From Haliotis rubra (taxonomy: Eukaryota), in assembly GCF_003918875.1 (NCBI RefSeq), contig NW_025765346.1, positions 124,001 to 188,000 on the forward strand: DNA of 64,000 bases, given 5' to 3'. This document shows, in pieces, positions 4,001 through 30,830 of the stretch. The translations under genes were made by a program, and so were the position numbers. Each line of letters begins with the position of its first letter. The first letter of the stretch is position 1. The notes beneath the pieces are model-generated. The model did not search any database. It saw only the letters and a program-made list of their open reading frames with translations, and was not told the origin of the DNA.

Positions 4001-5652
4001 AAACTAATGACTATTAATTAATTCATGATTCATTCACATACAAGGTACGGATTCAAAGAGGAATAGTCAACTACATACCATGTTTGTCGCAGGAACTCAT
4101 TGAGGAGGATAGATTGCTATCGCCTGTATGGTTAAGTGGATCATACTTCTGAGAGAGCAGAAGGTGAGCGGTTCGATCCCCGACCACGTCGTACGAAACG
4201 AAAAGCGTTCACGTACCCTGCTTCGAGCTCTGCTTTGAAGTATACAACACGGAGGTTCTTGAGAGCATATAAAAGTTGATATTCAAGTATAAGACAAATT
4301 ATTATGGATGTCAACTTCTTCTTCTTTTTTTGTTTGGGGCGGTGGGGTAGTCTAGTGGTTAAAGCGTTGGCTCGTCACGCCGAAGACCCGGGTTCGAATC
4401 CCCACATGGGTACAATGAGTGAAGCCCATTTCTGGTGTCCCCCGCCGTGATATTGCTGGAATATTGCTAAAAGCGGCGTAAAACCAAACTGTCAGTCAGT
4501 CAGTCTTTTTTTGTTTACTCAACGTTTCTGGTTTTTCTTTGCCCATTCATCATTCACCTGACAAAGGATCAAGGAAAAGTCCAGACACGTTGTGTATACA
4601 ATACAGAAGAACTTGACATTCATAATATTTTGTCTTACACAACAAGGAATTATCGGCCCGACGTATGTATACTGCGTCTGAGTCTGACATCCGTGGTACA
4701 TTGCGGCACGACTGAAAAAGAGCATTAGTCTAGACTGGAACACAAACACACGTACGCACGCATGCACGTTTGTACGCACGCACACACCCACCACCTACGT
4801 GTATTCACGTGACTTCAGAAGTACTATAGTAACTCCATTTTACATCACCAGCAATGTGTGAGCTGGCAGACAGTAAACTATGTTGTTTCGTTGTCATCAA
4901 AGTGGAGCAGTTACATCTCGCCCCGCCATATAGCTGGAATAATGCTGAGTGCAGCCCTAACAAACAAACATGTCGCCCCTATGCATCAGTTGTTTTCGCC
5001 CATGCGTATAGTACAGATTAATAACATTGCTAATAACAAATAGCGCGATGTCACATACGTTGATACGTTATACGACAATAAATATATCAGATAATTCCAC
5101 ATATATACTGGACAAAAATAGTTAGGGATATATGTAAATTTTGAAATTATGAATAATGATCTATTTATTCATTGACACACTGATTAAATATCAATCATGA
5201 AAATACAATATCCCTAATTTATTTTGTCCAGTATATTTTCTTCACCGTGCTTTTCAGGTGGATCGCTGGAATGGACTGATGAAACCCACTGTTCCGCCAA
5301 CACAAATGACAGCGTCATCTACGACAACAAGACACTCCAAATCAAACGACGCGGCACCTACCGTATCTACTCCCTCCTCACACTGAAATCCCAACACTGG
5401 CACCGACAACCTGACAACGTCGTACATGTTATGAAGAGGAGCAACACAAACCTGCCCAACCTGGGTAGCATATACATCATCATGGCCAAGAAGACATTAC
5501 CGGAAGTCAGCGGGAGGTTCGTCACGAGTTATCTGTCCGCGACTGTCAGACTGAGGCAAGGTGATCACGTGTCTGTAACTGTGAGCAACATGTCATATGT
5601 CTACCGGTTTCCGTCATCTAATTTCTTTGGTTTGTACTACGTTGGGGAGTGA
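1050..5652 (+). CDS. TNF-superfamily ligand (type II membrane, FasL/TRAIL-like), 3 coding exons, ~297 aa
   Basis: Exon 1, 1050-1436: ATG, transmembrane segment VIFTTVLVLSLSANAAFLFYLY, Cys-rich stalk, donor GTAAGT, phase 0. Exon 2, 3880-3991: TTCAG acceptor, FTDQ...RKSGAHLYLN (TNF strand A), donor GTAAGT, phase 1. Exon 3, 5258-5652: LEW, LQIKRRGTYRIYSLLT, TSYLSATVRLRQGDHVSV and NFFGLY TNF-domain motifs, then stop. Joined length is 894 nt with the frame intact. Confidence 0.9.
4336..4500 (+). mobile_element. tRNA-derived SINE family A (representative full copy)
   Basis: GGGGCGGTGGGGTAG.CTAGTGGTTAAAGCG A box, GGGTTCGAATCCC B box, and tail GCTGGAATATTGCTAAAAGCGGCGTAAAA. Other copies lie near 237-388(-), 1637-1797(-), 2156-2310(-), 3463-3607, 7696-7855, 13585-13672(-), 26083-26245(-), 32650-32813(-), 32987-33130(-), 40570-40720(-), 47241-47403(-), 49606-49774(-), 60931-61110 and 62905-63050. 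Confidence 0.9.
5106..5233. mobile_element. ~130-bp Tc1/mariner-type MITE, copy 1
   Basis: TIR TACTGGACAAAA..AGGGATAT / ATATCCCT..TTTTGTCCAGTA, flanked by TA. Near-identical copy at 57599-57726. Confidence 0.8.
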
Positions 5653-8561: not shown

Positions 8562-8802
8562 AGTGAGTGAGTTTAGTTTTACCCCGCACTCAGCAATATT
8601 CCAGCTATATGGCGGCGGTCTGTAAATAATCGAGTCGGGACCAGACAATCCAGTGATCAACAACATGAGCATCGACCTGCGCAATTGGGAACCGATGACA
8701 TGTGTCAACCAAGCCAGCGAGCCTGACCACCCGATCCCGTTAGTCGCCTCTTACGACAGGCATGGGTTACTGAAGGTTCATTCCAACCCGGACCTTCACG
8801 GG
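8562..8802 (-). mobile_element. SINE-like family B (GTCGTAAGAGGCGACTAA core; representative copy)
   Basis: ~240-bp repeat ACCCGTGAAG...CATGCYTGTCGTAAGAGGCGACTAACGGGATCGGGTGG...ATATAGCTGGAATATTGCTGAGTGCGG. Copies lie near 2447-2672, 3650-3855, 6690-6850, 7460-7652, 17000-17160, 19545-19780, 29427-29649, 41290-41470, 46650-46878, 48986-49220, 54640-54880 and 61645-61768. Confidence 0.85.
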
Positions 8803-9610
8803 TGTGATGGGGAGTAAGTTGAGATGGGATTAACGTCGCTTTTGATCGTATTTAGAGAGATACTGTTACACCATTACAGTTTAAAGTGGATACCACTACA
8901 GCAAACTGTCTCCGAACTGACCAGTTCTAGTCTTATTTACTTATTGCCAAGCCATAGGCCACAAGCTACTATCTTTTACTACTTTTTCGTAGGACTTCAC
9001 GAGAGATTGCACACTCGGACTAACCCTCTGTTCACAAGACCTAGTGCCACACTGTTCATCTTAAGAATCTATTGTCAGACTCGGTGAGTGAGTGAGTGAG
9101 TTAATATTTAACGTCACATCGGCAATATTTCAGCCATATCGTGACGAGAACATATGTGACATTGAAATGGAATATATGTATATTATAAAAACCTGTCGAC
9201 GAAGGACAGTAAAACAACTAGAATATCACAATTACAACTAAAACTAGTGTGGAAAGTCAAAACTGATAACACTATTTGGACAATACAATATAAAAACAGG
9301 CTATAGATCGCCAACAACTGAAGGTAGATCACCATACATACTAGGGACTATGATGCATGACTTACAGTACCTTCGAAATCGACTTATTTGGAACAGACCA
9401 TGGTTTCATGCAAATTAGTCTGCGATGATATTGCATTACAAAGGAAACTTTTTAAATGCCCATTTTGAAATTAAAACTAGCTTCATTATAAACGATAGCT
9501 GACGTAAAAAGTAATAACTTTAAGACTGAAACTATTAAGGATTTAGCTACCATGGAGCCGTACTATCACTATAAAATGAAACAGGTATGAGGGGTCGTCT
9601 CCTTCATATT

Positions 9611-10540: not shown

Positions 10541-11346
10541 ACAAACTAGTGTTTGAATGTCTAAACATGAACCTAATGACAATTCGAAATTATCAATTCC
10601 TTGTAAATATGGTAAAAGTTATAAAGATAATTCCGCGTAACTCATCTGTTATTCGCTCACCAATACAATATACACTACAGGAGTCTTTGCGTAAACACCC
10701 AATGTCCGATCTTAAAGGTGCACGCCTTAGTTTGCCATGTCTTTGAGACCATCGCCGAAGATGTGGGTAATTTGGATTATACGTCTCGCAATGTAATTGT
10801 TTTAAGGTTATATTAGTTTATTTAAAGGTCCGTTCTCAAGGTGCGACTTGAAGTAACAACCTATAGTATCTACCTGTCGTATCTACATATAGATTTAAAA
10901 TGAGATGATAAATGAGTTGATAGGTCTTGGAATCTCTCGCGATAATCTCGTCGTGGGAGATGGTGGCGTTAATTGCCGTACATTTGATAAATGAAAAAAA
11001 AAGAAACCACAAATCTGTTTGGGTAGGCAGTGGATACTGCGCAGACGTACCACCGGCGTTTAGTTCGAGTCCCAACGTGGGTCTACGGCTTCCAAATTTG
11101 CGACTGAATGAGTTGAGTTTTAGGCCGTATTAACAATATTCCAGCAATATCACAACGGGGAATACTCGATTATTTACAGCCCGCAGCCATAGAGCTGGAA
11201 TATTGCTGAGTGCGGCGTAAAACTAAACTCACTCAGTCATTTATAATGCATGCGTGTATTACTGAAAATGATGTAATAATATCAGTAAAATTGGTACTAA
11301 CGTACACCGAGATTTTCTCTACAGGCACTGAACTGAATATTGTTGG

Positions 11347-12827: not shown

Positions 12828-15800
12828 ATGGCGCCTGGGCTCATCTTCACCATCTGCTCTTGTGCTCTGCTGATAGCTGGTAATATGCCTTTTATTGCAC
12901 TATATGTCACAGTCAATGTGTAAAATGAATAGTATTTTACAGGAAATTGTGTGTATTTTATATATAGAATAATTCCATGTATAATATGATTGAGATTTAA
13001 TAACGACTCGAGACATATTATTAAGGCCCTTGTGTTTATATACTATCTTTGTATGCTGCAATAGAGGTAGCGAACAGCTAGTTCACATGATTTACATTCA
13101 TTATTAATTAAAACTTAGATACATAAGATATACACAAGATACAGTTTGAAACAGTTCTATTTCATTATTCGATGTGTATAAGTCAACTTTACACATGGAT
13201 GAGGTGTGTCAAAATACAATTTTGTAAAATGTTCAACCTCAGTGAAATGAGCATTGGGACATGGAGGTACTGTCTAAACGCTAGATGGAAGAGAAGAGGT
13301 GTTCTTTGATCCATCAACAAAAACATGAAAATACCTTTCAGAATCTTTGAGAATGTCACACATATCAGTCAGTGTCGTGTACGTCCACCATTAAGACTTA
13401 ACGTTGACTTCCCAACCTTTTCTATCTTCAAATCCAGCTAAACATTCATTCAACGTTATTGTTCCAGCTGGGGTATTCTGTTGTTCACAGTAACTGTGTG
13501 CGCCCTGAGCCAAATTGGTATTGAGCTATGCGAACTGAAATGAAAGCCTTTGCTATCTATGAGCAACAGATTATCCTTTTGAGACTGACTGACTAAGTTT
13601 GGTTTTAAGCCGCTTTTAGCAATATTCCAGCAACATCACGGTGGGGGACACCAGAAATGGGCTTCACACACCGTTTAAATACTCTTTTCAAGGATATTGT
13701 GAAGGGTGATGCAAGTTCAGAATCAGACTATGTGTTTCGATTTTTTATATTTTCTACACATGAAGTAGTATCATAGTTCTAAGACATGTGTATATCATTT
13801 GACACTTCTGTTCCGAGAAATAGAATCCTTTTTTGACTTTCCACTTAGCCGGAGTCTTGTAAAGGCACTAAATGGACATAAAATGACATAGATAAGATAA
13901 ACTTTATTGTCCCGCAAGGGAAATTTGTCTTGCATTTAAACAGCCAATACAATGCCAAGAAAAAAAGATAATTTAAAGTACATCTATACACACAATGTCA
14001 AGCTAATCACAATATAATAATGAATCATAATTAAAGTACATAATATAACAATCACTCGTGCAATCAATGTCTTCACTGTTACAATTTTGGAGGTAGATTT
14101 AGAAGTTTTACGATGTATGGAAAAATTACTTTGAAGTTCTATTAGTCTTGTAATACAAGATTTTGAAATGGCGGCCAGATGGCAGAAATTCATAACATTC
14201 ATTTAATAAGTGTAATGGAGCAGATTGAATGGGTAATATTTGCATGGAGGTGATTGGCATTTTTGCATTATTAATGCTTTAATGTTCAAGATGAATAAAA
14301 GCCGGAATATTTCCTTCATGGAAAAGACAAACTTATTTACTTGCTCAACAAATTGAAAATAATGCTTATTCATTTCACTTACATATTTTGCCAAACATAT
14401 TGCAGTGGTGTATGCTACACTGGAGGCGACTGGTAACCATGACACCGAGCTCACTGAGGATGCGATCAGAGAAAAGCGAGGGCTAAGAGGGAGACATCGC
14501 CATCGACACAGGAGCCACAGACAGGGAGATGGAGATGGTGATGGAGATGAAGATGGAGACGACAATGTTCGTAGTGGTAGGGGAAGAGGAGGAGGGCGCA
14601 GGCGCAGACCTGGACGAGGCCGACGACCTGGTGGTAGACGTGGTGGGAGAGGTCAACGTAGGATAGCAAGTGCCACAGATCTATCCGACATGCCTCAAAG
14701 AGCACAACGACTAATCACTGCCCTGGTTGGTGCACAGAACAGTTTCACAGCCAATCTCCACCGTCAAGTTGGACAACCTGTTACAGATGTTGTGTACTCT
14801 CCGTTTAGCCTTCACCAAGCGTTGACCATGACCTTCATGGGCGCTATGGGTAATACTGCGTTTCAGATGAAGAGAACACTCGCTTTACAGGGACTAGGGC
14901 GACGTACGCGCCGAGCAGCAAAGAAGCTTAACGAAGTTATCAGCCATTCTGGCAATGCTACCCTGAAAACGGCGAATGGTGTGTATGTTAAAGCAGGATT
15001 GACTGTCGTGGACGATTTCACAGAGAGTCTGCGTGTATTCTACCAGGCTAATATCTCCTCGTTTGACTGGGAACACCCAGATGGACCAGAAGGTCCGATT
15101 AACGAATGGGTTTCTGAGCAGACGAATAATCTCATTCCAAACCTAGTGGCCCCGGATACCATAGATTCGTTGACAGCTATGATTCTAGTCAACGCGATCT
15201 ACTTTAAAGCAAAGTGGAAGACGCCATTCACACCATCCCTAACAACTCAGCAGATGTTCAGAAAGTCACGTACTGAGCAGGTGCCCGTTCAGATGATGCA
15301 AGTAGAAGGGATGTTCAAGTTGGGCACTGTTCCTGGTCATGCTGCCAGAATATTGGAGTTACCATATGAAGATGACCGCTTCAGTATGCTCGTGATGCTT
15401 CCCAATGAAATCGAAGACCTACCCACACTGGAGAACGGGCTGACGGTAGATCTTCTCGCCAGTAGGTTGGACACTGTCGTAGCTTCGGACTTGAAGGTAT
15501 ATTTGCCTCGTTTCAAACTGGAGACAGCAATATCAGTAAAGGAATCTTTACAAAATATGGGGATGACCAATCCATTCCTGCGGGGAATGGCAGACTTCAG
15601 CGGCATCGTGAGCACTCGTCAGCTTTACATTTCTGATGTACTTCATAAAGCTGTTGTCGACGTTAATGAAATTGGAAGTGAAGCTGCTGGGGCCTCAGCA
15701 GTTATCATTTGTAAGTATTTCGTTTCTAAAAATGGATTCTATAGCCAAATCAAATAGAAAAACAGATCCAAATAAAACCACAAGTCTTTTTCAGGTTGCA

Positions 15801-16557
15801 GTTGACTTGTGTTTCCATTTGCTCCCCATTTCAGTGATTGAACATATGTTCATGAGTTCGTTAGAATCGTTCTCCTGTGTATGTTGGTATGTCACGCTCC
15901 TGTAAGTTGTGTTATTTAATCATTGTATTCATTTTGAGAGTGATTAAAAGTGAAAGCATTTTGACGTACTTTGATTCCAGAAATATTCCATTACTGAGTA
16001 TGTCCTACCGCTAATGCTATTTCAAGATATATTTTTTCTATTTTACTTAGTATTATCTAAACATGTTTAGATAATTTGCAGAACGTACATGTGGGAATAA
16101 TAAGGTATTGCACAGTCGTGTTTCAGTGGTAGGTTGTAATTCCTAAAATACGTATCATTACAAAACCTTTTTTATCATGTTAGTCGTGTCTACATACATG
16201 TTTGCAGACGATGGATCATCAACATTCATGTCTCGCAAAAATTTGAAACAGAAAACAGTTCTCAGCTGACCTCGTTCATGTAAAACGTATGTTTGCTCCT
16301 AAGTAAGATAACTATCATTAGATATTATGGTAATGTGTATTTTCCTTAAAGATATACTTGTTGACATTTGGAAGACATGCAATATTTGTCAGTGAAATAT
16401 TGAGCTAAAAGTCTTTCACTGTTTACTGTTTACTTCAGCTCTCGAATCACTTCGAATAATGCCCGAGATTCGCTGTGACCACCCCTTCCTCTTCATCATC
16501 AGAGACAACGTCTCCAAAGCCAACCTCTTCATTGGCAAGTTCTCCGGTGGGGCCTAA
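12828..16557 (+). CDS. Secreted serpin paralogue 1 (~491 aa) with basic/acidic N-terminal extension; predicted P1 Glu
   Basis: Exons are 12828-12879 (signal peptide MAPGLIFTICSCALLIA), 14406-15710 and 16439-16557; both introns are phase 1, GT-AG. Serpin motifs: VYSPFS, NAIYFKAKW, LPRFKLE, HKAVVDVNEIGSEAAG hinge, and DHPFLFIIRD...LFIGK at the C-terminus. Confidence 0.95.
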
Positions 16558-19038
16558 ATGTGGATTATTCCAGGTCCCCCGAATTGATCGTATTCTGACT
16601 CAACTTTGGAGTCAACCATCATATGTTGCCTGGTCACTTATTATTACAAAAAAGGAAGTGTAGTTGGATATAGATATAGCAAGTCTCTCACATCTCGACT
16701 ATTCACATCCATGTATCGATTAGAAAAGTAAAAGAACATGGATTGCAGCTGTTAATAGGTTATATGTTTTTTTTCCAATAAGTTCCTCATCAGCCACAGG
16801 AAGTAAATTTTAATGAATATCTAATACCTCTTGTCCATCGTGATGTGCACCAGTTATTGATTGTAAGAGAGTCACATTACTGGATGAAAAATGTATTTGC
16901 TTAATATCAAATGTTACACAAGAAGCCACTGTCGTACGTGCGTATAACAAAGTTCTGGAATAAACTATTTCCCAACTCTGTGAATGTCAAGTTACCAAAT
17001 GAGTGAGTGAGTGAGTTTAGTTTTACGCCGCACTCAGCAATATTCCAGCTATATGGCGGCGGTCTGTAAATAATCGAGTCTGGACCAGACAATCCAGTGA
17101 TCAACAGCATGAGCATCGATCTGCGCAATTTGGAACCGATGACGTGTCAACCAAGTCAGTTACCATATGAAGATATTTGCTGTACATGATATGCCTGGTC
17201 TCCATTCAATTCGTCCATATCACTGCTGACATATACTTGCGAGTGTATTTACAGACTACATATGTCCGAAACATACTGTTGACATGTGACACAAAGTAAC
17301 AGATGAACGTAACATATCTCAAAAATTGGGTTCCAATGCTGTACCGTGTATCTCGTGTATGCTATGATAATGTGTGGATCTTATTCTGGCGTGATTTCCT
17401 ACTGTTGTGACAACAAATTAGAGTGAGTGAGTGAGTGAGTATTTATAGTGACATAGTAATATTTCAGCCATATCGATTAGTATGACTTCGACTTCAGTTT
17501 ACACTGTTTTGTACAGTGTGATGCTCACATGATGAAAAGTCAAACATGTGTGTGAAATACAAGCATATATTTCAGCTATTTGCACATTTAACCATGTACA
17601 AACATGTTTGAGGAAACGACGAGTGTGCTTCCCTAAGCGTGATACGACCACTGACTTTGAATCAGCTTCCCAGGGACATGCATGTGATCGACAGCGTTCC
17701 ACAACACAGCGGCAAAACCTGACTTTAACAAGAGGGTCATCACTTAGTTTCTCCTACTACACACAGAAATAACAGCAGCGGCCTTACAGTTTCTGTTCAG
17801 GCAGTTTCTATTAAGGTCCCATTTCCCTCCTCCCATTTGAGGAGAGAATATGCAGTCTAATGTGTCGATGTAAGATAGCTGGGGTATTGTGGACTGCTGC
17901 CTGAAAGGCTAGCACTGCACCAAATGGTACAAACAGTCACATCACATGTGCACGCACGTCACTCTACAACTGGAGTAATCTTGAAAGATTGTTTAGCCAT
18001 ATTTCACCGTACACGTGTGCAGCATACATTTAAGTTACACCTGGCACCTGAACAACGTTTGACAAAATGTTGAATTAAAATTGTAATTACTCTACTGTAT
18101 CACCCAGTAATATCAGTAATCGTGACTGAGGTCTCTTTCAGTTTCGGCTTCATGCTGATTGAAAGTTCCTTGAAGTTGTACAGATGTTTGCCAAGATGCC
18201 TAATTGTAACATTTGGTAACGTGAATGTTTTGCTGCAAATATTTGACGATTAGAAACTGTCCGTTTTCATGACGTCACAAATGATCTAATGGCATGTCGT
18301 CTCATAAAAAGATACTACGATAACTTCGTATTAAGAATGATCTCCTCACAACCAGTCCTAATCCCTGATTAATGTGGAAATTGCTCATGGCTCCACTCAT
18401 GTGAAACTCTGTTACCCGAGTTGTAATTGGGTAATACTCCTTGTTCGCTCATTTACATGGAGGCGCTTGTACCTCTTCATAAAAGTGGGGGATGCAGAGT
18501 ATAAAGCCCTAGTTTGTACATCACAAGTATAGTTCAATAAACCGCATTATGAATTAGGCGTCTCACAATGCAATGGTGTAAAGTATAAACCTAAACTGCA
18601 ATAATGCGCCATTGCAACAGCTGCAGTATTACAATACTGCTGACTGCATAAAACAACCGTGATGATCCGGGTCAGAATTGGTCATCATCAATCCATGCTT
18701 ATCGTGAGAGGTGACTACATATGGTCAGATTGAAGAGGTGGTCTTACACACACATACCCAAACAGACCCCCACCCCACCCCATCCCATGCTTCCCACCCC
18801 TTGAGCATACAACTACTGGTAATCTCGGTTAATATTTATATCTCCCAATATTGAAACACGGAATGAAAGAAGATATTTCTTTCCACCATAAGTTCCCTTT
18901 CTGCACAGTACGTATTTCCACAGAATAATCACTAGAAGTGCATCTTAAAATTTTAAGTGACCGATTTAAAATTAGAACAAGAAGGTTTTCAAAATTAAGT
19001 AAGGGGACATTTAAAATCTTAGATGTCTTTATTATTCA

Positions 19039-19216
19039 TGTATCATATGACATCACGAGAATGGTTCAAGTGACAAGACTACCCTCGTGAGTCTTCGATG
19101 ATATTCGATCTCCTGCAACACACCAGTACTCTGTCACAAGACACATGACCCTCTCTTATCCCCGTCAACATGATGGAACGCAACTCGTGATGGTCAACAA
19201 GTGTTGTGTTTTGGCG
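19039..19216 (+). promoter_or_regulatory. Conserved upstream non-coding block, serpin 2 copy
   Basis: Paralogue of 11347-11521, about 1 kb upstream of the serpin 2 ATG. Confidence 0.45.
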
Positions 19217-20229
19217 TGTCGTCTTTAAGGTTCCCAATGTGCTAGAGGAACGTTAATGTTGATGTTCTTGAGATGTCGTAGACTGTTTTCGATGAAGATC
19301 CTTCAGGTTTCACTAAAGAAAATCAATGATTTGTTGCTTTGTCTTGCTGTAACATGCAACATTGCAGCACCTCCTTCAAAACAAACAGTAAATTATTTGA
19401 ACAGTGATTGAAAAAATATCTCATCTCAAGACCTCAAGAATAACACATTTTGAACTCGCTTAATTAGAAACAAAACACGCCAAAAAGACAAACTAATACT
19501 ATACATATTGGAAATGAAGCAAGGCCTTGAAGCACCACGAGAGAGTAAGTGAGTGTAGTTGTACGCGGCACTCAGCAATATTTCAGCTATATGGAGTCGG
19601 TCTGTAAATGAGTCTGGACCAGACAATCCAGTGATCAACAGCATGAGCATCGATCTGCGCAATTGGGAACTGATGACATGTGTCAACCAAGTCAGCGAGC
19701 CTGACCACCTGATCCCCTTAGTCGCCTCTTACGACAAGCATGGGGTACTGAATATCAACATTCTAACCCGGACCTTCACGAGTAAGCACCACGAACAAGG
19801 TGGATGTTCTGCTTCACACAGGGGTCATTTCATGCCATCGTGATTGTCTATGTTTATTAAAAAGTTAATGGCTCTTTATTCACATAGTCAAACTTAAACA
19901 ACCAAAAGCCTTTCTAAACAAAAGAAAATCCACTTTAGGATTCCAACTATATAATGACCCTGTTTTAACGAATCATAATCTTTGATCATAATATTAATGA
20001 TATGGAATCAATCACTTTACTAGCATGTTCGAGAACCAGTGGGAGTGGGACATCAAGCGACGAGCAAACAGGCAAATCACAGAAATAACAAGTACATACG
20101 ACAGAGACAAACACAGCGCACAAGAAGCATTCGCCTAAATACTGCAGTCGAGGGTCTTGTAAACATATGATACATCACCTCAGGTTACAGTGTCACACCC
20201 TCCGCGCAAGGAACAGCATCTGGAAAGCC

Positions 20230-23200
20230 ATGGGGCCTAGTCTCATCTTCACCATCTGCTCTTGTGTTCTTCTCATAGCAGGTAATACGTCTTGCATGTG
20301 TATTGATGTTTCATTCACGTTCTTATATGTAGAACATATCACGTCCTATATTGTTGTTTTTTAAAATGAGATTTAAACTTTTATATAAGGTGAAGAACAT
20401 CCGAGGTGCGTCAGCACCCGGAATCGTCTATGGGGCGTGAGATATTACCAAGGCTGTTTTTTATATATATTGGCATGAACTATGTTTGTACCCAAAAAAA
20501 CGCTCCTTTGATGCAGTGCGAAAGCAGTGTATGATATCCGTCTCATATTAACCTAAAGTCTGCACTAAACTGCACTTTGGCATTTTATTATGTTCTTGAA
20601 GGCACATTATATTGTTTCAGTGTTGACATTTGTCTGATCGGAACTTGTTCCGTTGAAAAACATTGCATCTATCTTACTATGACCCTTAGGTATTTGTAAA
20701 TGTGTTGAAATCTGACACTGATTCAGTATTGAACAGTAATCTAACACTCAACATTTCAAGGACACAATTTAAAAGAAATATATATTCTTTTGGTTTGAGT
20801 CAATATACCTTAGAGACACTTGATTCTGTTTTCATTCGAATAAAGATTCAAAACTTATTTTAGACAAATAAATAGATACATTTATCGTATACGTTCAGAG
20901 TCACGTGAATTGATATGGGCAATATATATTTTACTGAAATTGACGGGACAACTTGCATGTAAATTGAATATTCCAGGCGCGTTTTACCTCGGGCAATTCA
21001 ACAATGGAACGTCTGGACAAAGACGAATAAGACAAGCGTGCGTACTGTATAAACGCGGTGGTCTCCAGGTGGTATGTGACATAGCAATAGTGACCTGGAA
21101 TTCTCTTAAAATGCAGCTTTTCACTTTAATTAAACTATCAAAGCTGAGGAACTGATATGACCCCAGTATAAAGTCTCGGTCTAAGTCAAATCCATCCAAT
21201 ATCTTGATTGAAGCGAGTTTGAGTATAGTTTGGGATTCCATTTGGCTGATTATATTCAAGGGCATTCCGTAACGCCTTATGTAGTGTGATAACATACAAG
21301 TTTGCCCTGAACTATTATGGCTGTGACGTTGTCATAGTCCAAAGCAAAACTGTCCATTACCCATTGGTGTAGTGTGTAAAAATACCACCACAGCCTTCTA
21401 TGTTGTGTAAGCACACCCAGATTCCATCTGCCTAGGCAATGAATGTTCCGCTTCAGTAAACATAGACATGTGGACAAAGCATGGGAGACAGTATGTCTCT
21501 AATGCCTCAATCGTAATTTCAAATATTTCAATTCAAGAGGCCATTTCATGCCCAAACTCACTGTTTTGTAAACTCGGAAAAGAGTATTGACTCCGATTTT
21601 GACATGACGTAAACAATTGTTCACTGATGTGAATTGTTATAATTTTCCCACATGGGCAAGATTACACTATACACACATGTCTAAGTATGAGTAATTTAGT
21701 GCACTGAAAACAGAACTAATGTGAAGGAACACATTTTTATTGTCAAAGGCATGATTTCACATCATTACAATTTATGGGCACGCATTTACTTAACTTCACA
21801 ACCAAACAGTAATGTCCTTTAGCTATGAGGTAGTCATTTTAGAATTCATTCAAAATTATTGTTCCAACTGTCATATTATGTTGTTCCCAATACCTATCTG
21901 CCCTTATAACTCAAAGCTGCGTCAAATTGGTATTGTACTAAGTGGGTTCTGTAATGAAATATGTTCGTGTAAGACTTTGCTATCTATGAGCTACATATTA
22001 TCTTTTACATCCTTCAACGTACACTTTCATGGCAGATTTGAAGTTCAAAATAAGATAATGTGATTCTATGTTTTCTGTAAATAAAGTAGTATCATATTTC
22101 TTATAATTGTCCAGTTGTGTCTATCATATGACTTATATGTATCCCTCAGTCTCCGGTTTTAAATGGATGAGAGTCAGAAATTTGATCAAACGTAGGCAAG
22201 GAGATTATTTCATGACACTTCTTCAACTGCATGCATGACATAAGAGCAATTGGCATTGTAGACCATTAATGGTTTAGTGTTTCCAAAAATAGAAAATGTC
22301 CGTAATATTTCGCTCATGCAAAAGACATACCTAATTACTTGTTCCATACATGGAATCTAATGCTTATTCATTCAAATTAAGTATTTTGCAAAACATATTG
22401 CAGTGGTCTATGCTACTCTTGAAGCAACTGGTAACCATGACACCGAGCTCACTGAGGATGCGATCAGAGAAAAGCGAGGGCTAAGAGGGAGACAACGCCA
22501 TCGACACAGGAGCCACAGACAGGGTGATGGAGATGGTGATGGAGGTGAAGATGGAGAAGACAACGTTGGTAGTGTTAGGGGAAGAGGAGAAGGGCGCAGG
22601 CGAAGGCCTGGACGAGGCCGACGACCTGGTGGTGGTAGACGTGGTGGGAGAGGTCAACGTCGTACGGTAGATCTATCCAACATGACTCAAAGAGCACAAC
22701 GACTAATCGCGGCCCTGGTTGGTGCACAGAACAGTTTCACAGCCAATCTCCACAGGCAAGTTGGACAACCTGTTACAGACGTTGTGTACTCTCCGTTTAG
22801 CATTCATCAAGCATTGACCATGACATACATGGGGGCTAATGGGGATACAGCAAATCAAATGAAGAGAACACTCGCTTTACAGGGACTTGGACGACGCACG
22901 CGTCGAGCAGCAAAGAAAATCAACAAAGTCATCAGACGTTCTGGCAACGCTACCCTGAAGACAGCGAATGGCGTGTATGTGAAAGCAGATTTGAATGTTG
23001 TGGATGAGTTTTCAGATAGTCTGCGTGTATTCTACCAGGCTAATATTTCCTCGTTTGACTGGGAGCACCCAGATGGTCCAGAAGGTCCGATTAACGAATG
23101 GGTTTCTGAACAGACGAATAATCTCATTCCAAACCTAGTGGCCCCGGGAACCATAGATTCGTTGACAGCTATGATTCTAGTCAACGCGATCTACTTTAAA

Positions 23201-24774
23201 GCAAAGTGGAAGACGCCATTTACACAATCCCTAACAACTCAGCAGATGTTCAGAAAGTCACGTACTGAGCAGGTGCCCGTTCAGATGATGCAAGTAGAAG
23301 GGATGTTCAAGTTGGGCACTGTTCCTGGTCATGCTGCCAGAATATTGGAGTTACCATATGAAGGTGACCGCTTCAGTATGCTCGTGATGCTTCCCAATGA
23401 AATCGAAGACCTACCCACACTGGAGAACGGGCTGACGGTAGATCTTCTCGCCAGTAGGTTGGACACTGTCGTAGCTTCGGACTTGAAGGTATATTTGCCT
23501 CGTTTCAAACTGGAGACAGCAATATCAGTAAAGGAATCTTTACAAAATATGGGGATGACCAATCCATTCCTGGAGGGAATGGCAGACTTCAGCGGCATCG
23601 TGAACACCGGCCAACTGTACATCTCTGATGTAATTCATAAAGCTGTTGTCGACGTCAACGAAGTCGGAAGTGAAGCTGCTGGAGCCACAGGAGTTGTTAT
23701 GAGTAAGTATTGAATCTAAAAGCGACCAACCCGTGTCAATAGCCACAACAAATTGAAATACAGACTCCAGTATAACCACAAGCCTGTTTTAGGAGGTAAT
23801 TGACTTGCTTTTGCATGTGTTGGTTACGGAGCCACTTGTGGGTCATGATTCGTTCCCCTTTTCAGTGGTCACGATATGGCTGAAGTACTGCCGATGTGAC
23901 TTAAATTCGTAACTCACTCACCAACCCACTCCTTTTCAATGATTCATTAACATATGTTCATGATATAGTTAGAACATAGTTCTGCAACATAGTTTTTTTA
24001 ATGGATATTTCTTATTTCACTACAGGCTGATAAATGAAATCGTCTGTTATCATCACTATTTGATCATACATAAACACATGACTGCGATACAGCCGAGAGG
24101 AGTATATCTGACTATATCCTATATCTAATCATGATTTAATGTGTTTTTAAAAAAAAAATTTACTCAGTACCTAAGTACAGACAAAATAATGGTCAGCTGT
24201 TCTGTTCTCTGTTTATGTCCAGTTTAGAGTTCACTGCCAGATTTCGTCTTGTTAGAATCATGTATATGGTGCAAACACGATCACTCTTAACCAGGTTTAA
24301 CTACATTTCCGCATCATTGACATTTGGATGACCTGTTGCTGAAATGTTGTTTCGTGTGTTTTTCGCCAATGTTCCTCAAGTTGCCAGAAAAGTAATTATC
24401 AAAGGGTCTCGTCCGAAATTTGTATGTGACATTAATTCATAAACTGCGTGGCAAAAGAATGATAATTTAATTTGGCGAAAACAATGTCATAATTGAAAAT
24501 GGAAATAGTCTCAAAAGCACTACAGTGTTTAGGGCTTAAACACAATTAGATATCCATGTAAAACATATCACCATCGAATAACCGTTACTAATAGACAGTA
24601 TATATTTTGTTAACTTTTAAAGACATATGGCTACAATGTTTATTATTTCCTTCAGCTCTCACGTCACTTCGAATAACGCCCGAGATTCGCTGTGACCACC
24701 CCTTCCTCTTCATCATCAGAGACAACGTCTCCAAAGCCAACCTCTTCATTGGCAAGTTCTCCGGTGGAGCCTGA
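20230..24774 (+). CDS. Secreted serpin paralogue 2 (~489 aa); predicted P1 Thr
   Basis: Exons are 20230-20281 (MGPSLIFTICSCVLLIA), 22404-23702 and 24656-24774, with the same structure and phases as paralogue 1. Reactive-centre loop (RCL) EVGSEAAGATGVVMTLT-SLRITP. Confidence 0.95.
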
Positions 24775-24823: not shown

Positions 24824-24863
<40 letters not shown>

Positions 24864-24864
24864 G
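24816..24864. repeat. (GTT)n microsatellite just 3' of the serpin 2 stop
   Basis: Direct reading; absent at the equivalent site after serpin 1. Confidence 0.95.
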
Positions 24865-25220
24865 CCACACTCAGCAATGCCCCAGCAGCATGGCGGGATC
24901 GTATTGTGACTCAACTTTGGAGCCAAACATCAGGTGTTGCCTGATAACACATATACACAAATAAAGAAGTGTATTTGGATATCGATGTTGCAATTCTTTC
25001 GTCTTTCAAATATTCCCATCCATGTATAGATTAGAAGAGTAAAGCAATATGGATTTTTAAAAACACATGATTCCTCCAGCTCCAATTTATCAAAACACGG
25101 GTGGTTTTGATTTTAGCGTTCAACTAACACATATGGGACCTACAACAGTAAACAACTGATTTGGTGATGATTTTCGCATTCACACCATAATGAGTTACAT
25201 AACATGACTGTCAAATGACA

Positions 25221-26025: not shown

Positions 26026-26581
26026 ACGCCTTGTCAATCAGGGGACGGCATGTAAAGTGGAAAATGCTTTTACTGAAGAGTGAATGGGTGAGTTTAGTTT
26101 TACGCCTCTTTTAGCAATTTTCCAACAATATCACGACGGGGAACGCCAGAAATGGGCTTCACACATTGTGCCCTTGTGGGTAATCGAACCTGGGTCTTCA
26201 GTGTGAAGAGCGGACGCTTTAACCATTAGGTTACCCCGCCGCCCCTACTGAAGAGTGAATCACTCGAATCCATACACACCCTTACTGAGAGCATAAGACA
26301 ATGTTGATTTTCTTCGATCGCACCCTGTTGAGAGATGGTGTTTTTGTACAATGACTTTAATTTCGTAATATATCACTGTTTCTCCTTGGGTTAGATTATT
26401 GTTCACATGCTACTTTGTCGCAGGGTGTGGCCCATGACAACGGACTGTTGTTCATTAAACTTGTCTGCACTGACTGTGTTTTTACCTGGTTCAAAACGTG
26501 TATAAAGTATCACACGCGTTATCTCTTTTAGCTGGATTGGCACATGGTTGACTATGTGATTTCCCTGGTTCAAAATGTGAT

Positions 26582-27430: not shown

Positions 27431-29649
27431 TAATGAAACAAATGCTTTATGTACCCCATGTGGACATTACAAGCCACATTTATAAATTGTTCATTGTATT
27501 GTTATGAAGGCTTTAGCAGATAATGATGTTGACAATACCGTTTATTATGGTCATGTTTGTTTTGCTGTTTTCTCTTCGCTATCGAGCTTCAAAAGGTGTT
27601 CAGAAAATGGATATACATCTTTTTAAATCCAAAACTAAAGTGGTACACGGAGGCGAATTCAAGGATATAATTCTTTAATCAGCGTTTAATATCTCTGACC
27701 GACATTAAATATTCAAAAATGGCATGCCTAAATCAACTGAATTTATTGAAAAATGTTTTCCATCTTGGCAGGGGACTAGTCCACCCTTTTTCACATGTAT
27801 CGAGTATTTTTCGGTAACTCGATTATGGCTACATCGTCTATGCTGCAACTTGCAAAAGCAGCCTTAAACTAGTATATTCTGAGCATTAAAAAATGTCTTC
27901 TTGTTGATGTGTTCGGAAATGGCGAATATGAGGTCGAGTGTGTTGACTGACGTTTAGGTCTTTTTGAGTCTTGTGTTGAGGGGTCTGAGGGTTACATCGT
28001 TGTATGTGTCGCTACCATTGCAGGGAATCTAGTATACACATACTCTGGGGTAGGGACACGAGTCGCTGGTGCCTCTGTCATTGGCGTGCAGGAGGGTTTT
28101 GCTGCTGCTGAGACGACAGATTGGATCCCCATCATGTGGGAAGCCACTAAAGTCCTATTGACCACCACCAACAAGAAGAAACACTACAAGAGGCCACAGA
28201 CATCAGTGGATCAACCATGGCCATGGGATATACATGACTTGTTAATATAATCATCACTGTTGGCTTCCCTTGTATTTGTGTTATTCACTAGTTTGGCCTG
28301 GATATATTCATGCCTCTCATTTGTTTATAATGATTTACCTTGTTACATGCCACCATTGTGATCGCATCATCCATGCTTGGATTAATATTCCCTGGCTTCC
28401 ATTGGTCCATCCACCTTACCCATTTAGCGCAAATTAACTACCGACTTCCCTTGTTATCATATCACTATTGGTATTTCACATGCACATATATAGCTATCTT
28501 TCCCGTCAATACATCTTGCCCAGCCCTTCATACAACTATTTTTTTAAATTCTCTTCCTGAAGATCTGTGCAATAAGAAATCTTCTATTTTGCCGCAATCT
28601 AGGAATGAGAATTAAACCTTTTATTTCTGCTGCTCACATTGAGCACGAAAATAGTCTCCTTTTCGATTGCTTTCTTCTCTCCCGTGGCAATTGGTCAGAC
28701 CACTGCTGGATCGTGCCTCAATTAAAATTAGAGGCATCTGAAGTAACGGAATCAGCAAAATATAATCAGCTAAGAAGCAATTTGGAAGATTTCACACTCT
28801 GTATGTTCAGACAACACCAATGTCATTGGATCCAAAACTTTTTACACTGCGTTTAATACTCTTAACGCATTAATTCCCAAACTAATTGCATATTTTCAAA
28901 TGTAGTTTATTGGTTATTATGAGCTTAACTGAGGGTTGTTTTTAATGTAGAATGATGCATATGTTTTGAGAAATTGCAAAATATGTCTGTGCTTTGTCTC
29001 TGCGAATGCAAGGGGCGAATGTCCCCAAGTTTCAAGTACATTTTTAAAGAAAAGCATATTCATAATAACTCCCCCTCTTAAAATACATACATAATACGAA
29101 ATTCAATTTCAGACATTTTGTGGTAGATTTTATCAAACATTTAAAATCAACATGAAAATCAATTTAATGGGTATTTCATTTATTCATTTCAAAAGTCTCA
29201 AACAATTTCCCAGATGATCACTGTGACAGTAAGGCACATAATGATAATAATACATTTGACACAAACAACAAATACTTTTGTTATTTCATTGAGAGGGAAC
29301 GTCTGATAATATCTGATATAATCAGATACTCGTGTCAAGTTTCCATAAGCAACATCTTCATCTTCAGAAACTGACTAAAAGAATGTGTTGCGAAGATTTC
29401 TGTCCATACACGGCCAAGAAATGGAAAGTGAGTGAGTGAGTTCCGCACTAGGCAATATTCCAGCTATATGGTGGCCGTCTGTATATAATCGAGTCTGGAC
29501 CAGACAATCAAGTGATTAACAGCATGAGCATCGATCTGCGCAATTGGGAACCGATGACATGTGTCAACCACGCCAGCGAGCCTGACCACCCGACCCCTCT
29601 TACGACGAACATGGGCTACTGAAGGTTCATTCTAACCCGGACCTTCACG

Positions 29650-30830
29650 AGTAGAAATGGAAAGCTTCATAGCAGTGCATTGAAAACCACAATACCACAT
29701 TACTTGCATGTTTACGCGTGGTCTTTTCTGCAGTGTGTACACTTTCGCTGTGTAAGCATCTCCCCCTCATAGCGTGACCCTGGACATCAGTGGGTGGAAT
29801 GCTTCTGGGGGGAAGACAGTGTCCAGTGAAATTTGGTTGTCGGTAATAGCAGACCAGAACCTTGCCTAAAATATCGTCATTCCAGATTACAATCTGGTGC
29901 CTAACAAAGGCATAGTCGATAGCTTCTCGTGGCACTTTCTTCATTTCCTTAGGGCTCATGACTGGACATTTTAAAAATGTATGTGTCAGCATTGAACCAG
30001 GCCCCGATTTCTCGAAACAAACTTAAGTCTGAGTTTTGACTTAAGTTAGAGTTTTTACTCTTTGAGAAAACGCTGTTAAATTCATTTCCAAGAAAGAACT
30101 GAAATCGATATCAACTCAAATTTAGAAGACAATTTGAGTTTGGTGGAAAGATTTCGTAAGTTGTTTGGGCCTTTTTATTGCAAAAATGCAGTTGAATGCA
30201 GAGGAATGTTTGAAATTTCAGTTTGAAATTTTAGTAAACACTTGTTTGTTTCGAGAAGTCGGGGCCAGTTCCTGCAACACCCTTTGCAGAAAGATAATCC
30301 AGTAGTTTAAAAGAGGTGAAGAAATGACCAAGTATAAGATGGCAAGGAAAGCCAAGCGGTTAACAACTACAGAACCTCCTAGTCCTAGATCTGGATCACT
30401 CGTGATACCTTCGGCTTGATGTGGCTCAAACTGCACAGAATATCCCGAGGGCGTAGCGAGAACCCTGAACGTGAATTCAAATAGAACAATCTTTCCTCCT
30501 ACGAACCGTTTAGCAGAGAGGCGGCCATAGTAAGGTACTACTGATTCGTTTACAGATAAATGGTGAACATCAGAATCAGTGAGCGTCCATTTATCATGGC
30601 ATCAAAGGTCGCACCTTTCCAAACTGACCACGGTCAGGCAAGTTCTGATTGCCGGGATGAAAGGTAGCAGAATATCTTTCCAAACCTGTTTCATTAAATC
30701 GTAGACGTAAGAGCTTCACTGTAACTATCTTCATTCTGTTCCAAGTACATGCTTCGACTCAATAAAACAGTATACCTAGATATGAGCAGAATTGCACGAA
30801 AAAGCTTCATCTCTTCTTTGTCTGCCTTGA
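29650..30830 (-). mobile_element. piggyBac (PGBD2/3-like) transposase relic
   Basis: Frameshifted fragments EMKLFRAILLISRY, QFGKVRPL, LSVNESVVPYYGR...ATPSGYSVQFEPHQ...DLGLGGSVV, HFFTSFKLL...GVAGTG, KCPVMSPKEMKK..R...DY...WND, and a Cys-rich C-terminus CTHC...HCYEAFH. Confidence 0.8.
30001..30265. mobile_element. PIF/Harbinger-type MITE nested in the piggyBac relic
   Basis: Terminal inverted repeats (TIRs) GCCCCGATTTCTCGAAAC / GTTTCGAGAAGTCGGGGC. CAG target-site duplication (TSD) at 29998-30000 and 30266-30268. Removing it rejoins the transposase GTG motif. Confidence 0.8.

What the first reader, a model, noticed from the sequence alone, without database searches (positions are those of the whole stretch)
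15660..24690. Twin serpins differ at the bait: predicted P1 Glu vs P1 Thr
Seen: the spliced RCLs are EIGSEAAGASAVIISLE-SLRIMP and EVGSEAAGATGVVMTLT-SLRITP, while the downstream residues of exon 3 are identical. Known: counting from the P17 Glu, as in alpha1-antitrypsin, gives P1-P1' of E-S and T-S. Small hinge residues indicate inhibitory serpins. An acidic P1 is rare (e.g. SERPINB9 against granzyme B; viral CrmA with Asp against caspases). Inference: a secreted P1-Glu serpin implies an acid-specific target such as a microbial glutamyl endopeptidase or an unrecognised host protease, with specificity diverging after duplication.
Basis: partly seen in the sequence, partly recalled or inferred. 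Interest (0 to 1): 0.7.

Follow-up and report, generated by a model that had tools for sequence, protein, structure and literature searches.

The report
Abalone twin serpins: Glu versus Thr bait
Two neighbouring blacklip-abalone genes encode secreted protease-trapping proteins (serpins) that differ at the bait residue, glutamate in one and threonine in the other; the acidic bait is rare and shared across abalone species, but similar tick serpins are known and the target protease is unknown.

Summary
The window is Haliotis rubra. It carries two tandem three-exon serpin genes, already modelled by NCBI (P0001; P0121). In both, a phase-1 intron splits the bait loop inside the P3 codon. Gene B's junction rests on homology and the NCBI model.

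Counting from the hinge Glu gives Glu-Ser (A) and Thr-Ser (B). Three results support this register:
- An ungapped alignment puts A's Glu on Glu341 of tick Iripin-4, the crystallographic P1.
- Other H. rubra serpins with the same 17+12 loop geometry carry Arg or Leu in that column.
- The sister gene reads GVR|S.

Glu or Asp occupies this column in H. asinina and H. rufescens copies. None of 113 non-abalone relatives has an acidic residue there. H. asinina also keeps a Glu/Thr pair.

The loop is the most variable segment, changing at about the neutral rate. The body is constrained (omega about 0.2) and partly homogenised by gene conversion.

These are inhibitory-type, secreted serpins with different baits, but the target is unknown and secreted P1-Glu serpins already exist in ticks. 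This is a new member of a known kind, of moderate interest.

The parts
12828..12879 (+). Gene A exon 1 coding part: start codon and hydrophobic signal-like leader, ending with the first base of a split Val codon; donor G|gtaata
   Evidence: Motif located. Matches the N-terminus of P0001. The RNA contig joint 12878/9 to 14405/6 is seen in X1, X2 and X15.
14406..15710 (+). Gene A exon 2: end of the signal peptide, the Arg-rich tail and most of the serpin domain up to P4, plus the first base of the P3 codon
   Evidence: ORF. Pfam Serpin E 6.4e-88. 100% identical to P0001, H. rubra XP_046559941.1. Covered by RNA contigs.
15668..15710 (+). Gene A hinge and proximal bait loop, P17 Glu (GAA 15668-15670) to P4 Ile, plus the first base of P3
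   Evidence: Read from the DNA. Hinge residues are invariant in 11 family members.
15711..16438 (+). Gene A intron 2 (728 nt, phase 1, GT..AG), which splits the P3 codon of the bait loop
   Evidence: Skipped by contigs of four runs from two studies, with no coverage inside. The sister gene on C879 has an intron at the same position and phase.
16439..16557 (+). Gene A exon 3 coding part: P3 (last two bases), P2 Leu, P1 Glu (GAA 16444-16446), P1' Ser, then strands s1C/s4B/s5B and stop TAA
   Evidence: RNA contigs carry the same letters.
20230..20281 (+). Gene B exon 1 coding part (signal-like leader)
   Evidence: Matches the N-terminus of P0121/P0002.
22404..23702 (+). Gene B exon 2 (tail plus serpin domain to P4 Met and the first base of P3). 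P17 Glu is at 23660-23662.
   Evidence: ORF. Pfam Serpin E 2.2e-91. 88.5% nucleotide identity to A over 22249-23819.
23703..24655 (+). Gene B intron 2 (953 nt). Only its first ~110 nt and last ~22 nt align with A's intron. An alternative donor 4 nt downstream (after 23706) gives NCBI isoform X2, a frameshifted truncated product.
   Evidence: P0002 ends in a short out-of-frame tail. Not checked with reads.
24656..24774 (+). Gene B exon 3 coding part: P2 Leu, P1 Thr (ACG 24661-24663), P1' Ser, then 30 residues identical to A and stop TGA
   Evidence: NCBI isoform X1 is P0121.

Best explanation
These are two tandem paralogues of an abalone-specific family of secreted, inhibitory-type serpins in Haliotis rubra.

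Each protein has a signal-like leader, an Arg-rich N-terminal tail and a complete serpin body. The reactive-centre loop is encoded across a phase-1 intron.

Proposed mechanism: like other inhibitory serpins, each protein offers this loop as a bait. A protease cuts between P1 and P1', stays bound as an acyl-enzyme, and is dragged across the molecule as the loop inserts into beta-sheet A.

The scissile bond is most likely Glu-Ser in gene A and Thr-Ser in gene B, so the two copies should trap different proteases. Copy A, and its Glu/Asp-bearing counterparts in other abalones, would trap an enzyme that accepts an acidic side chain in S1.

The family keeps its scaffold under purifying selection and exon-2 gene conversion. 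The P4-P5' bait changes freely.

Shown here: the gene structure, the transcription and splice of A, the serpin fold, the hinge consensus, the alignment register, and the distribution of P1 residues across species.

Inferred: secretion, inhibitory activity, the exact scissile bond, and the nature of the targets (endogenous or microbial), which remains unknown.
For: Structure and splice.

Register:
- The hinge-to-Glu distance is 17 residues.
- The alignment to Iripin-4 is ungapped. It puts E-S-L on Glu341-Ser342-Leu343, and puts the same column on the Arg aligned in Serpin-8 (Iripin-8; the paper gives its P1 as Arg364) and in 8gxv. Iripin-4's cleaved crystal ends at Glu341 (PMC10167670).
- Other H. 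rubra serpins with the same 17+12 geometry read MTR|S, KKR|S and MFL|S. The sister gene reads GVR|S in H. rubra and EVR|S in H. rufescens, H. cracherodii and H. discus.
- P1' Ser is invariant in 11 copies.

Inhibitory type:
- Hinge positions P17, P15-P12, P10 and P9 are invariant, and P11 is Ala in 10 of 11 copies.
- The AF2 model has pLDDT 91 and shows P15-P2 as an inserted strand. Its best matches are cleaved LEI 1hle (rmsd 1.5 A) and PI9 8zcr.

Acidic bait kept:
- Glu in H. rubra A, in 2 H. asinina copies and in 4 H. rufescens copies. Asp in 2 H. rufescens copies.
- 0 Glu/Asp among 113 non-abalone relatives.

Selection:
- Core dN 0.038, dS 0.196 for A vs B.
- P4-P3' is the most variable 9-residue window of the whole protein.
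Against: - No biochemical data exist.
- The loop changes at about the neutral rate (dN 0.18-0.33 against dS or intron divergence of about 0.2). The P1 identity could therefore be weakly selected.
- H. discus discus has Gln, and two species have Thr copies at P1.
- Iripin-4, the closest solved analogue, is only a weak granzyme B inhibitor and formed no complex with other proteases tested.
- HMMER anchors alpha1-antitrypsin-type loops on the C-terminal side, which places the antitrypsin P1 opposite the shared Leu of S-L-R.
- Gene B's junction was not checked with reads.
- The AF2 loop-inserted state is a prediction, not evidence of metastability.
Confidence: 0.55

Rival explanations
1. P2-driven cross-class inhibitors. 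The conserved bulky P2 (Leu/Phe/Ile), not P1, is the main recognition element. The targets would be papain-like cysteine proteases (cathepsin L-like, from host or parasite), or broad-specificity subtilisin-like proteases that tolerate Glu, Asp, Thr or Gln at P1. The twins would then differ in fine tuning rather than in protease class.
For: P2 is Leu, Phe or Ile in all 11 copies, while P1 takes E, D and T, and Q in H. discus. P1 Thr-Ser or Ser-Ser with a hydrophobic P2 is the pattern of the human cathepsin-inhibiting serpins B13 and B3, and PI-9 with P1 Glu inhibits subtilisin A; both points are from memory and were not checked here. Serpin B3/B4 are among the best sequence matches.
Against: Same-genome paralogues place classical serine-protease P1 residues (Arg, Leu) in the same column. 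Glu to Asp in H. rufescens is a conservative exchange, which suggests that charge matters. No cysteine-protease data exist.
Confidence: 0.2
2. The scissile bond is not where the hinge count puts it. Both proteins would be cut after the shared Leu at P2, or within the shared S-L-R (Leu|Arg, or after Arg). The twins would then have the same P1 and largely the same targets.
For: HMMER aligns the antitrypsin-type P1 Met to the Leu of S-L-R, with a two-residue gap on the P side. Some serpins use a P side of 16 residues or two overlapping reactive sites (established knowledge: CrmA, alpha2-antiplasmin, SERPINB1).
Against: The two extra residues are explained by a 12-residue P' side. That is the commonest length among relatives (46 of 113) and is the same in H. 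rubra paralogues with Arg at column 17. The Arg of S-L-R corresponds to Pro in those paralogues and is absent in H. rufescens copies. P sides of 19-20 residues destabilise the complex (established knowledge: Zhou, Carrell and Huntington 2001, from memory). The alignment to Iripin-4 is ungapped.
Confidence: 0.1
3. Non-inhibitory serpins. The proteins would act through the scaffold or the charged N-terminal tail, for example as a matrix or shell-associated protein, carrier or chaperone. The bait loop would simply drift, so Glu versus Thr would carry no functional meaning.
For: The loop P4-P5' changes at about the neutral rate. The family carries an unusual Arg/Gly/Asp-rich tail. Serpins are reported in mollusc shell matrices (titles; not read in depth).
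Against: The hinge P17-P9 is nearly invariant and of the inhibitory type in 11 copies, whereas non-inhibitory serpins usually lose it (established knowledge). P1' Ser, P6' Pro and everything beyond are invariant. Glu or Asp recurs in three species.
Confidence: 0.1

Closest known systems
Iripin-4, salivary serpin of the tick Ixodes ricinus (PDB 7zbf; PMC10167670)
   Same: A secreted invertebrate serpin with P1 Glu followed by Ser-Leu. Its bait-loop region aligns without gaps to gene A's, Glu on Glu. It has the same small-residue hinge, and its target is poorly defined.
   Different: Iripin-4 is injected into a vertebrate host, where granzyme B is a plausible (weakly inhibited) target. Abalone has no such host, so the target must be its own or microbial. 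Iripin-4 lacks the Arg-rich N-terminal tail. No link to a Glu/Thr twin arrangement is described.
SERPINB9 (PI-9; PDB 8zcr) and poxvirus CrmA
   Same: Inhibitory serpins with an acidic P1 (Glu and Asp respectively; established knowledge). PI9 is among the best structural matches of the model (rmsd 2.0 A).
   Different: Both are intracellular, have no signal peptide, and act on granzyme B or caspases. The abalone proteins have a signal-like leader and an N-terminal extension. CrmA has a shorter P side.
Tandem serpin arrays with variable bait loops (the other H. rubra array on contig C2621; rodent and insect serpin expansions; tick arrays in PMC13116602)
   Same: Duplicated scaffolds kept similar, with differences concentrated in P4-P5'. 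The tick atlas lists several copies as 'Acidic P1 = E, unknown specificity'.
   Different: There are only two copies in H. rubra, against three in H. asinina and six in H. rufescens. The bait is split by an intron. Acidic P1 is the family's commonest state rather than one variant among many.
Haliotis discus discus serpins (ADQ43245.1 'serine protease inhibitor protein'; AKB08730.1 'serpin B-like protein 2')
   Same: The same gene family. ADQ43245.1 falls in the 90% cluster of the H. rufescens copies. AKB08730.1 is the sister gene with EVR|S.
   Different: The first has Gln and the second Arg at P1. I found no open paper analysing their bait loops.

Membership tests
Serpin superfamily (Pfam PF00079, MEROPS I4) | Significant match to the serpin domain over its length | tested here: met
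   E 6.4e-88 (A) and 2.2e-91 (B) for profile positions 2-329 of 370 in exon 2 alone. Exon 3 supplies the remainder. The full models P0001 and P0121 carry PF00079.
Serpin superfamily (Pfam PF00079, MEROPS I4) | Serpin three-dimensional fold | tested here: met
   AF2 model with pLDDT 91.1 and pTM 0.87. Foldseek top hits are serpins with TM up to 0.94 and rmsd 1.5-2 A. This is a prediction only.
Inhibitory serpins | Hinge consensus: P17 Glu, P15 Gly, P14 Ser/Thr, P12-P9 small residues | tested here: met
   E-x-G-S-E-A-A-G-A in both genes. P17, P15-P12, P10 and P9 are invariant in 11 family members, and P11 is Ala in 10 of 11.
Inhibitory serpins | P side of about 17 residues from P17 to P1, with the loop able to insert as strand s4A | tested here: met
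   Column 17 aligns ungapped with the P1 of Iripin-4 and with the Arg of Iripin-8, and with Arg/Leu of same-genome paralogues. AF2 models P15-P2 as an inserted strand.
Inhibitory serpins | SDS-stable covalent complex with a target protease; stressed-to-relaxed transition | not testable with these tools
   Needs recombinant protein and protease assays.
Acidic-P1 serpins (functional class: SERPINB9, CrmA, Iripin-4) | Asp or Glu at P1 | tested here: met
   Met for gene A (GAA 16444-16446). Not met for gene B (ACG, Thr).
Acidic-P1 serpins (functional class: SERPINB9, CrmA, Iripin-4) | Inhibition of an Asp/Glu-specific protease (granzyme B, caspases, glutamyl endopeptidases) | not testable with these tools
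No candidate abalone or microbial enzyme was identified.
Clade B (ov-)serpins, as the NCBI names 'serpin B6-like / B8-like' suggest | No cleavable N-terminal signal peptide and no N-terminal extension; intracellular | tested here: not met
   Exon 1 encodes a hydrophobic leader. About 80 residues of Arg/Gly/Asp-rich tail precede the serpin domain. The NCBI name reflects best similarity only, 34-38% identity to vertebrate clade B.

The most novel reading that the evidence does not exclude
Abalones keep a genus-specific family of secreted serpins whose default bait is acidic (Glu/Asp), often next to a Thr-bait twin. This would point to an as yet unrecognised extracellular Glu/Asp-specific protease as a physiologically important target, either an abalone enzyme or a secreted enzyme of an abalone pathogen. 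The serpin could be used as a covalent trap to fish out that enzyme.
Probability: 0.25. Interest if true: 0.6.

Novelty: new member of a known kind. Interest (0 to 1): 0.4.

Why it matters
If the Glu bait is functional, abalone or one of its pathogens must make an extracellular protease that cuts after acidic residues. Such specificity is rare in animals outside vertebrate granzyme B and caspases. Because serpins bind their targets covalently, the recombinant protein could pull that enzyme out of haemolymph, digestive fluid or pathogen secretomes.

For abalone aquaculture (Vibrio, Perkinsus, herpesvirus problems), a family of fast-changing secreted inhibitors is a reasonable candidate immune or digestive regulator.

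For serpin biology, the locus is a compact example of two processes working in opposite directions. Gene conversion homogenises the scaffold exon, while the bait, partly in a separate exon, stays different.

If instead the bait merely drifts, or P2 is what matters, this is an ordinary duplicated serpin pair.

Tried and rejected
1. Alpha1-antitrypsin-anchored alignment. It placed a two-residue gap on the P side and suggested Leu|Arg as the scissile bond. I rejected it as the primary reading because the extra residues sit on the P' side. Twelve residues is the commonest P' length among relatives and the same as in H. rubra paralogues with Arg at column 17. It is kept as a minor rival.

2. Protein tree. 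Copies grouped by species, suggesting independent recent duplications and parallel Glu-to-Thr changes. I rejected this as evidence. In H. asinina, exon 2 is 98.7% identical between copies while introns and flanks are 81-87% identical. Intron-2 identities are about equal among rubra A, asinina T and asinina E (78-81%). The tree therefore reflects gene conversion.

3. Fisher tests. Amino-acid differences are enriched in the loop: 8/22 vs 32/449, p 1.8e-4, and 4/22 vs 4/452, p 2.2e-4. These were first read as positive selection. I downgraded them, because against synonymous or intron divergence the loop changes at about the neutral rate. Only lack of constraint or diversification can be claimed.

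4. Literature. No open paper on abalone serpin bait loops. No hit for C. elegans SRP-2 as an acidic-P1 cross-class serpin, so that lead stays a memory only.

5. Target protease. A census of H. rubra chymotrypsin-fold proteases with a basic S1 pocket was not feasible with the whole-genome tool, which scores only the best candidates exon by exon.

6. High-depth stretch 13557-13707 in intron 1. No Rfam family and no tRNA. It is a dispersed repeat.

7. The joined spliced model was not sent to any tool. Exons were searched by reference, and the full-length proteins used were the database's own records (P0001, P0121).


Full report
**What is there.** The window comes from the blacklip abalone Haliotis rubra. 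The large ORF at 14405-15757 is 100% identical to NCBI protein XP_046559941.1 (P0001, 'serpin B6-like'). Its neighbour at 22403-23713 corresponds to XP_046559943.1/XP_046559944.1 (P0121/P0002). Both large exons match Pfam Serpin, at E 6e-88 and 2e-91. A tblastn of exon 2 and exon 3 of gene A finds exactly two copies in the window. A six-frame search of the whole assembly finds no further member of this subfamily. It finds only a 64%-identical sister gene on contig C879 and more distant arrays on C2621 and C2203.

**Gene structure.** Each gene has three coding exons.
- Gene A: 12828-12879, 14406-15710 and 16439-16557.
- Gene B: 20230-20281, 22404-23702 and 24656-24774.

Exon 1 encodes a hydrophobic leader. 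Exon 3 encodes the rest of the bait loop and the C-terminal strands. Intron 2 is phase 1 and splits the P3 codon. The C879 sister gene has an intron at the same position and phase.

**Check of the observation.** They equal the database models P0001 and P0121.

For gene A the junction is confirmed by RNA. Assembled contigs from four runs of two studies join 15710 to 16439 (GT..AG) and about 12879 to 14406. They leave both introns uncovered and show no variant between 15542 and 16550.

It rests on the conserved splice signals, the preserved frame and NCBI isoform X1. NCBI's isoform X2 uses a donor 4 nt further on and is frameshifted. A contig in run X15 with B-specific letters suggests that B is expressed.

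I did not send a joined spliced model to any tool. Exons were searched by reference, and the full-length sequences used were those the database returned.

**The P1 register.** Counting 17 residues from the hinge Glu gives Glu-Ser (A) and Thr-Ser (B). One alignment disagreed. HMMER, anchoring an alpha1-antitrypsin-type loop on its C-terminal side, put a two-residue gap on the P side and set the antitrypsin P1 against the shared Leu of S-L-R. Three lines of evidence resolve this in favour of the hinge count.
- The loop is 17 + 12 residues. A 12-residue P' side is the commonest length among 113 relatives (46 cases).
- Other H. rubra serpins with exactly this geometry carry classical P1 residues in column 17: MTR|S, KKR|S, MFL|S. 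The sister gene reads GVR|S in H. rubra and EVR|S in three other abalones. The Arg of S-L-R corresponds to Pro in those paralogues.
- The C-terminal 97 residues of P0001 align without any gap to tick Iripin-4. This places Glu-Ser-Leu on Glu341-Ser342-Leu343, and places the same column on the Arg aligned in Serpin-8 (Iripin-8) and in 8gxv. The Iripin-4 paper gives Arg364 as Iripin-8's P1 and shows a cleaved crystal structure that ends at Glu341 (PMC10167670).

**Inhibitory character.** Hinge positions P17, P15-P12, P10 and P9 are invariant across 11 family members, and P11 is Ala in 10 of 11, so the hinge is of the small-residue inhibitory type. An AF2 model of the serpin body is confident (pLDDT 91). 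It shows P15-P2 inserted as a strand, with the Glu at its end. It resembles cleaved leukocyte elastase inhibitor (rmsd 1.5 A) and PI9 most closely. This shows only that the sequence is compatible with loop insertion. Activity is inferred, not shown.

**Comparative picture.** The family is multi-copy in abalones: three copies in H. asinina, six in H. rufescens and a partial cDNA in H. discus discus. The column-17 residues are as follows.

| Species | Column-17 (P1) residue |
|---|---|
| H. rubra | Glu (A), Thr (B) |
| H. asinina | Glu, Glu, Thr |
| H. rufescens | Glu x4, Asp x2 |
| H. discus discus | Gln |

P1' is Ser throughout and P2 is always Leu, Phe or Ile. Among the 113 nearest non-abalone relatives, column 17 is R 48, K 14, C 13, T 9, G 8 and L 7, with no Glu or Asp. 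An acidic bait is therefore a genus-wide peculiarity, while Thr is not unusual.

Synteny holds. A TNF-domain gene lies upstream in both H. rubra and H. asinina, and an F5/8 type C gene lies downstream in H. rubra and H. rufescens. The order differs, though: Glu then Thr in H. rubra, and Thr then Glu in H. asinina.

**Evolutionary dynamics.**
- A vs B serpin core: dN 0.038, dS 0.196, omega about 0.2.
- Loop: dN 0.18-0.24, which is about the synonymous rate. The P1 codons GAA and ACG differ at all three positions.
- Across 11 copies, P4-P3' is the most variable 9-residue window of the whole protein, ahead of the low-complexity tail.

The protein tree groups copies by species, but this is misleading. 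The two linked H. asinina genes are 98.7% identical over exon 2 and only 81-87% identical in introns and flanks. Intron-2 identities among rubra A, asinina T and asinina E are all 78-81%, and B's intron 2 hardly aligns to anything. Exon 2 is therefore homogenised by gene conversion.

As a result I cannot tell whether the Glu/Thr split is ancestral and preserved, or arose twice. For the same reason my Fisher tests show concentration of differences in the loop, not proven positive selection.

**Mechanism and rivals.**
- Best reading (0.55): secreted suicide-substrate inhibitors with scissile bonds Glu|Ser and Thr|Ser and different targets. The target of the acidic bait is unknown.
- P2-driven recognition of papain-like or subtilisin-like enzymes (0.2).
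- A shifted scissile bond shared by both copies (0.1).
- A non-inhibitory role with a drifting loop (0.1).

**Novelty.** The genes are annotated, and the phenomenon is textbook serpin biology: duplicated scaffolds with divergent baits. It recurs elsewhere in this same genome. Secreted invertebrate serpins with P1 Glu are known from ticks. Iripin-4 is one, and the I. scapularis atlas lists several as 'Acidic P1 = E, unknown specificity'. What is new is a mollusc family in which the acidic bait is the prevailing state across species. Here no vertebrate granzyme can be the target. I found no open paper describing this. I rate it as a new member of a known kind, of moderate interest.

Noticed in passing
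window 5224-5652 (+): An ORF with a TNF-family domain (Pfam PF00229, E 7e-14) lies upstream of the serpin pair. A TNF-domain gene also lies upstream of the serpins in H. asinina (L001), so the neighbourhood is syntenic.
   Followed up: partly
window 45444-45827 (-): An exon-like ORF with an F5/8 type C / NedA-like galactose-binding domain (E 7e-7). An F5/8 type C gene also flanks the serpin array in H. rufescens (L002).
   Followed up: partly
window 50960-54196 (+): Consecutive ORFs with endonuclease (Exo_endo_phos) and reverse-transcriptase (RVT_1, E 2e-22) domains: a LINE-type retroelement.
   Followed up: partly
window 13557-13707 (intron 1 of gene A); similar copies at about 8562-8803, 11164-11239, 17001-17159, 19544-19783, 26077-26165 and 29427-29652: A short dispersed repeat, about 90-240 nt. 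In the RNA contig sets it reaches summed depths of 10^5, with many different flanks. No Rfam family and no tRNA was found. It is probably a SINE-like element carried in many transcripts.
   Followed up: partly
window 23703-23710 and 15711-15718: Both genes have tandem GT donors 4 nt apart (gtaagtat). NCBI models the +4 donor only for gene B (isoform X2, frameshifted and truncated before strands s4B/s5B). RNA contigs for gene A show only the canonical donor.
   Followed up: partly
window 24826-24868: A (GTT)n microsatellite in the 3' untranslated region of gene B, absent from gene A. It appears as a loose end in an RNA contig of run X15.
   Followed up: no
L001 10815-12332 versus L003 12421-13938 (H. 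asinina): A gene-conversion tract of about 1.5 kb covers exon 2 of the two linked serpins (98.7% identity), bounded by introns and flanks at 81-87% identity. A third, nearly identical Glu-bait copy (P0122, L004) lies about 240 kb away and could be a real distant copy or an assembly duplicate.
   Followed up: partly
L013 (G000 contig C2621:215685-219677): One H. rubra serpin reads ..DCVD-G.. around column 17. By the 17-residue count P1 would be Gly, and by a 16-residue (CrmA-like) count it would be Asp. This shows that the hinge count is not infallible in this genome.
   Followed up: no
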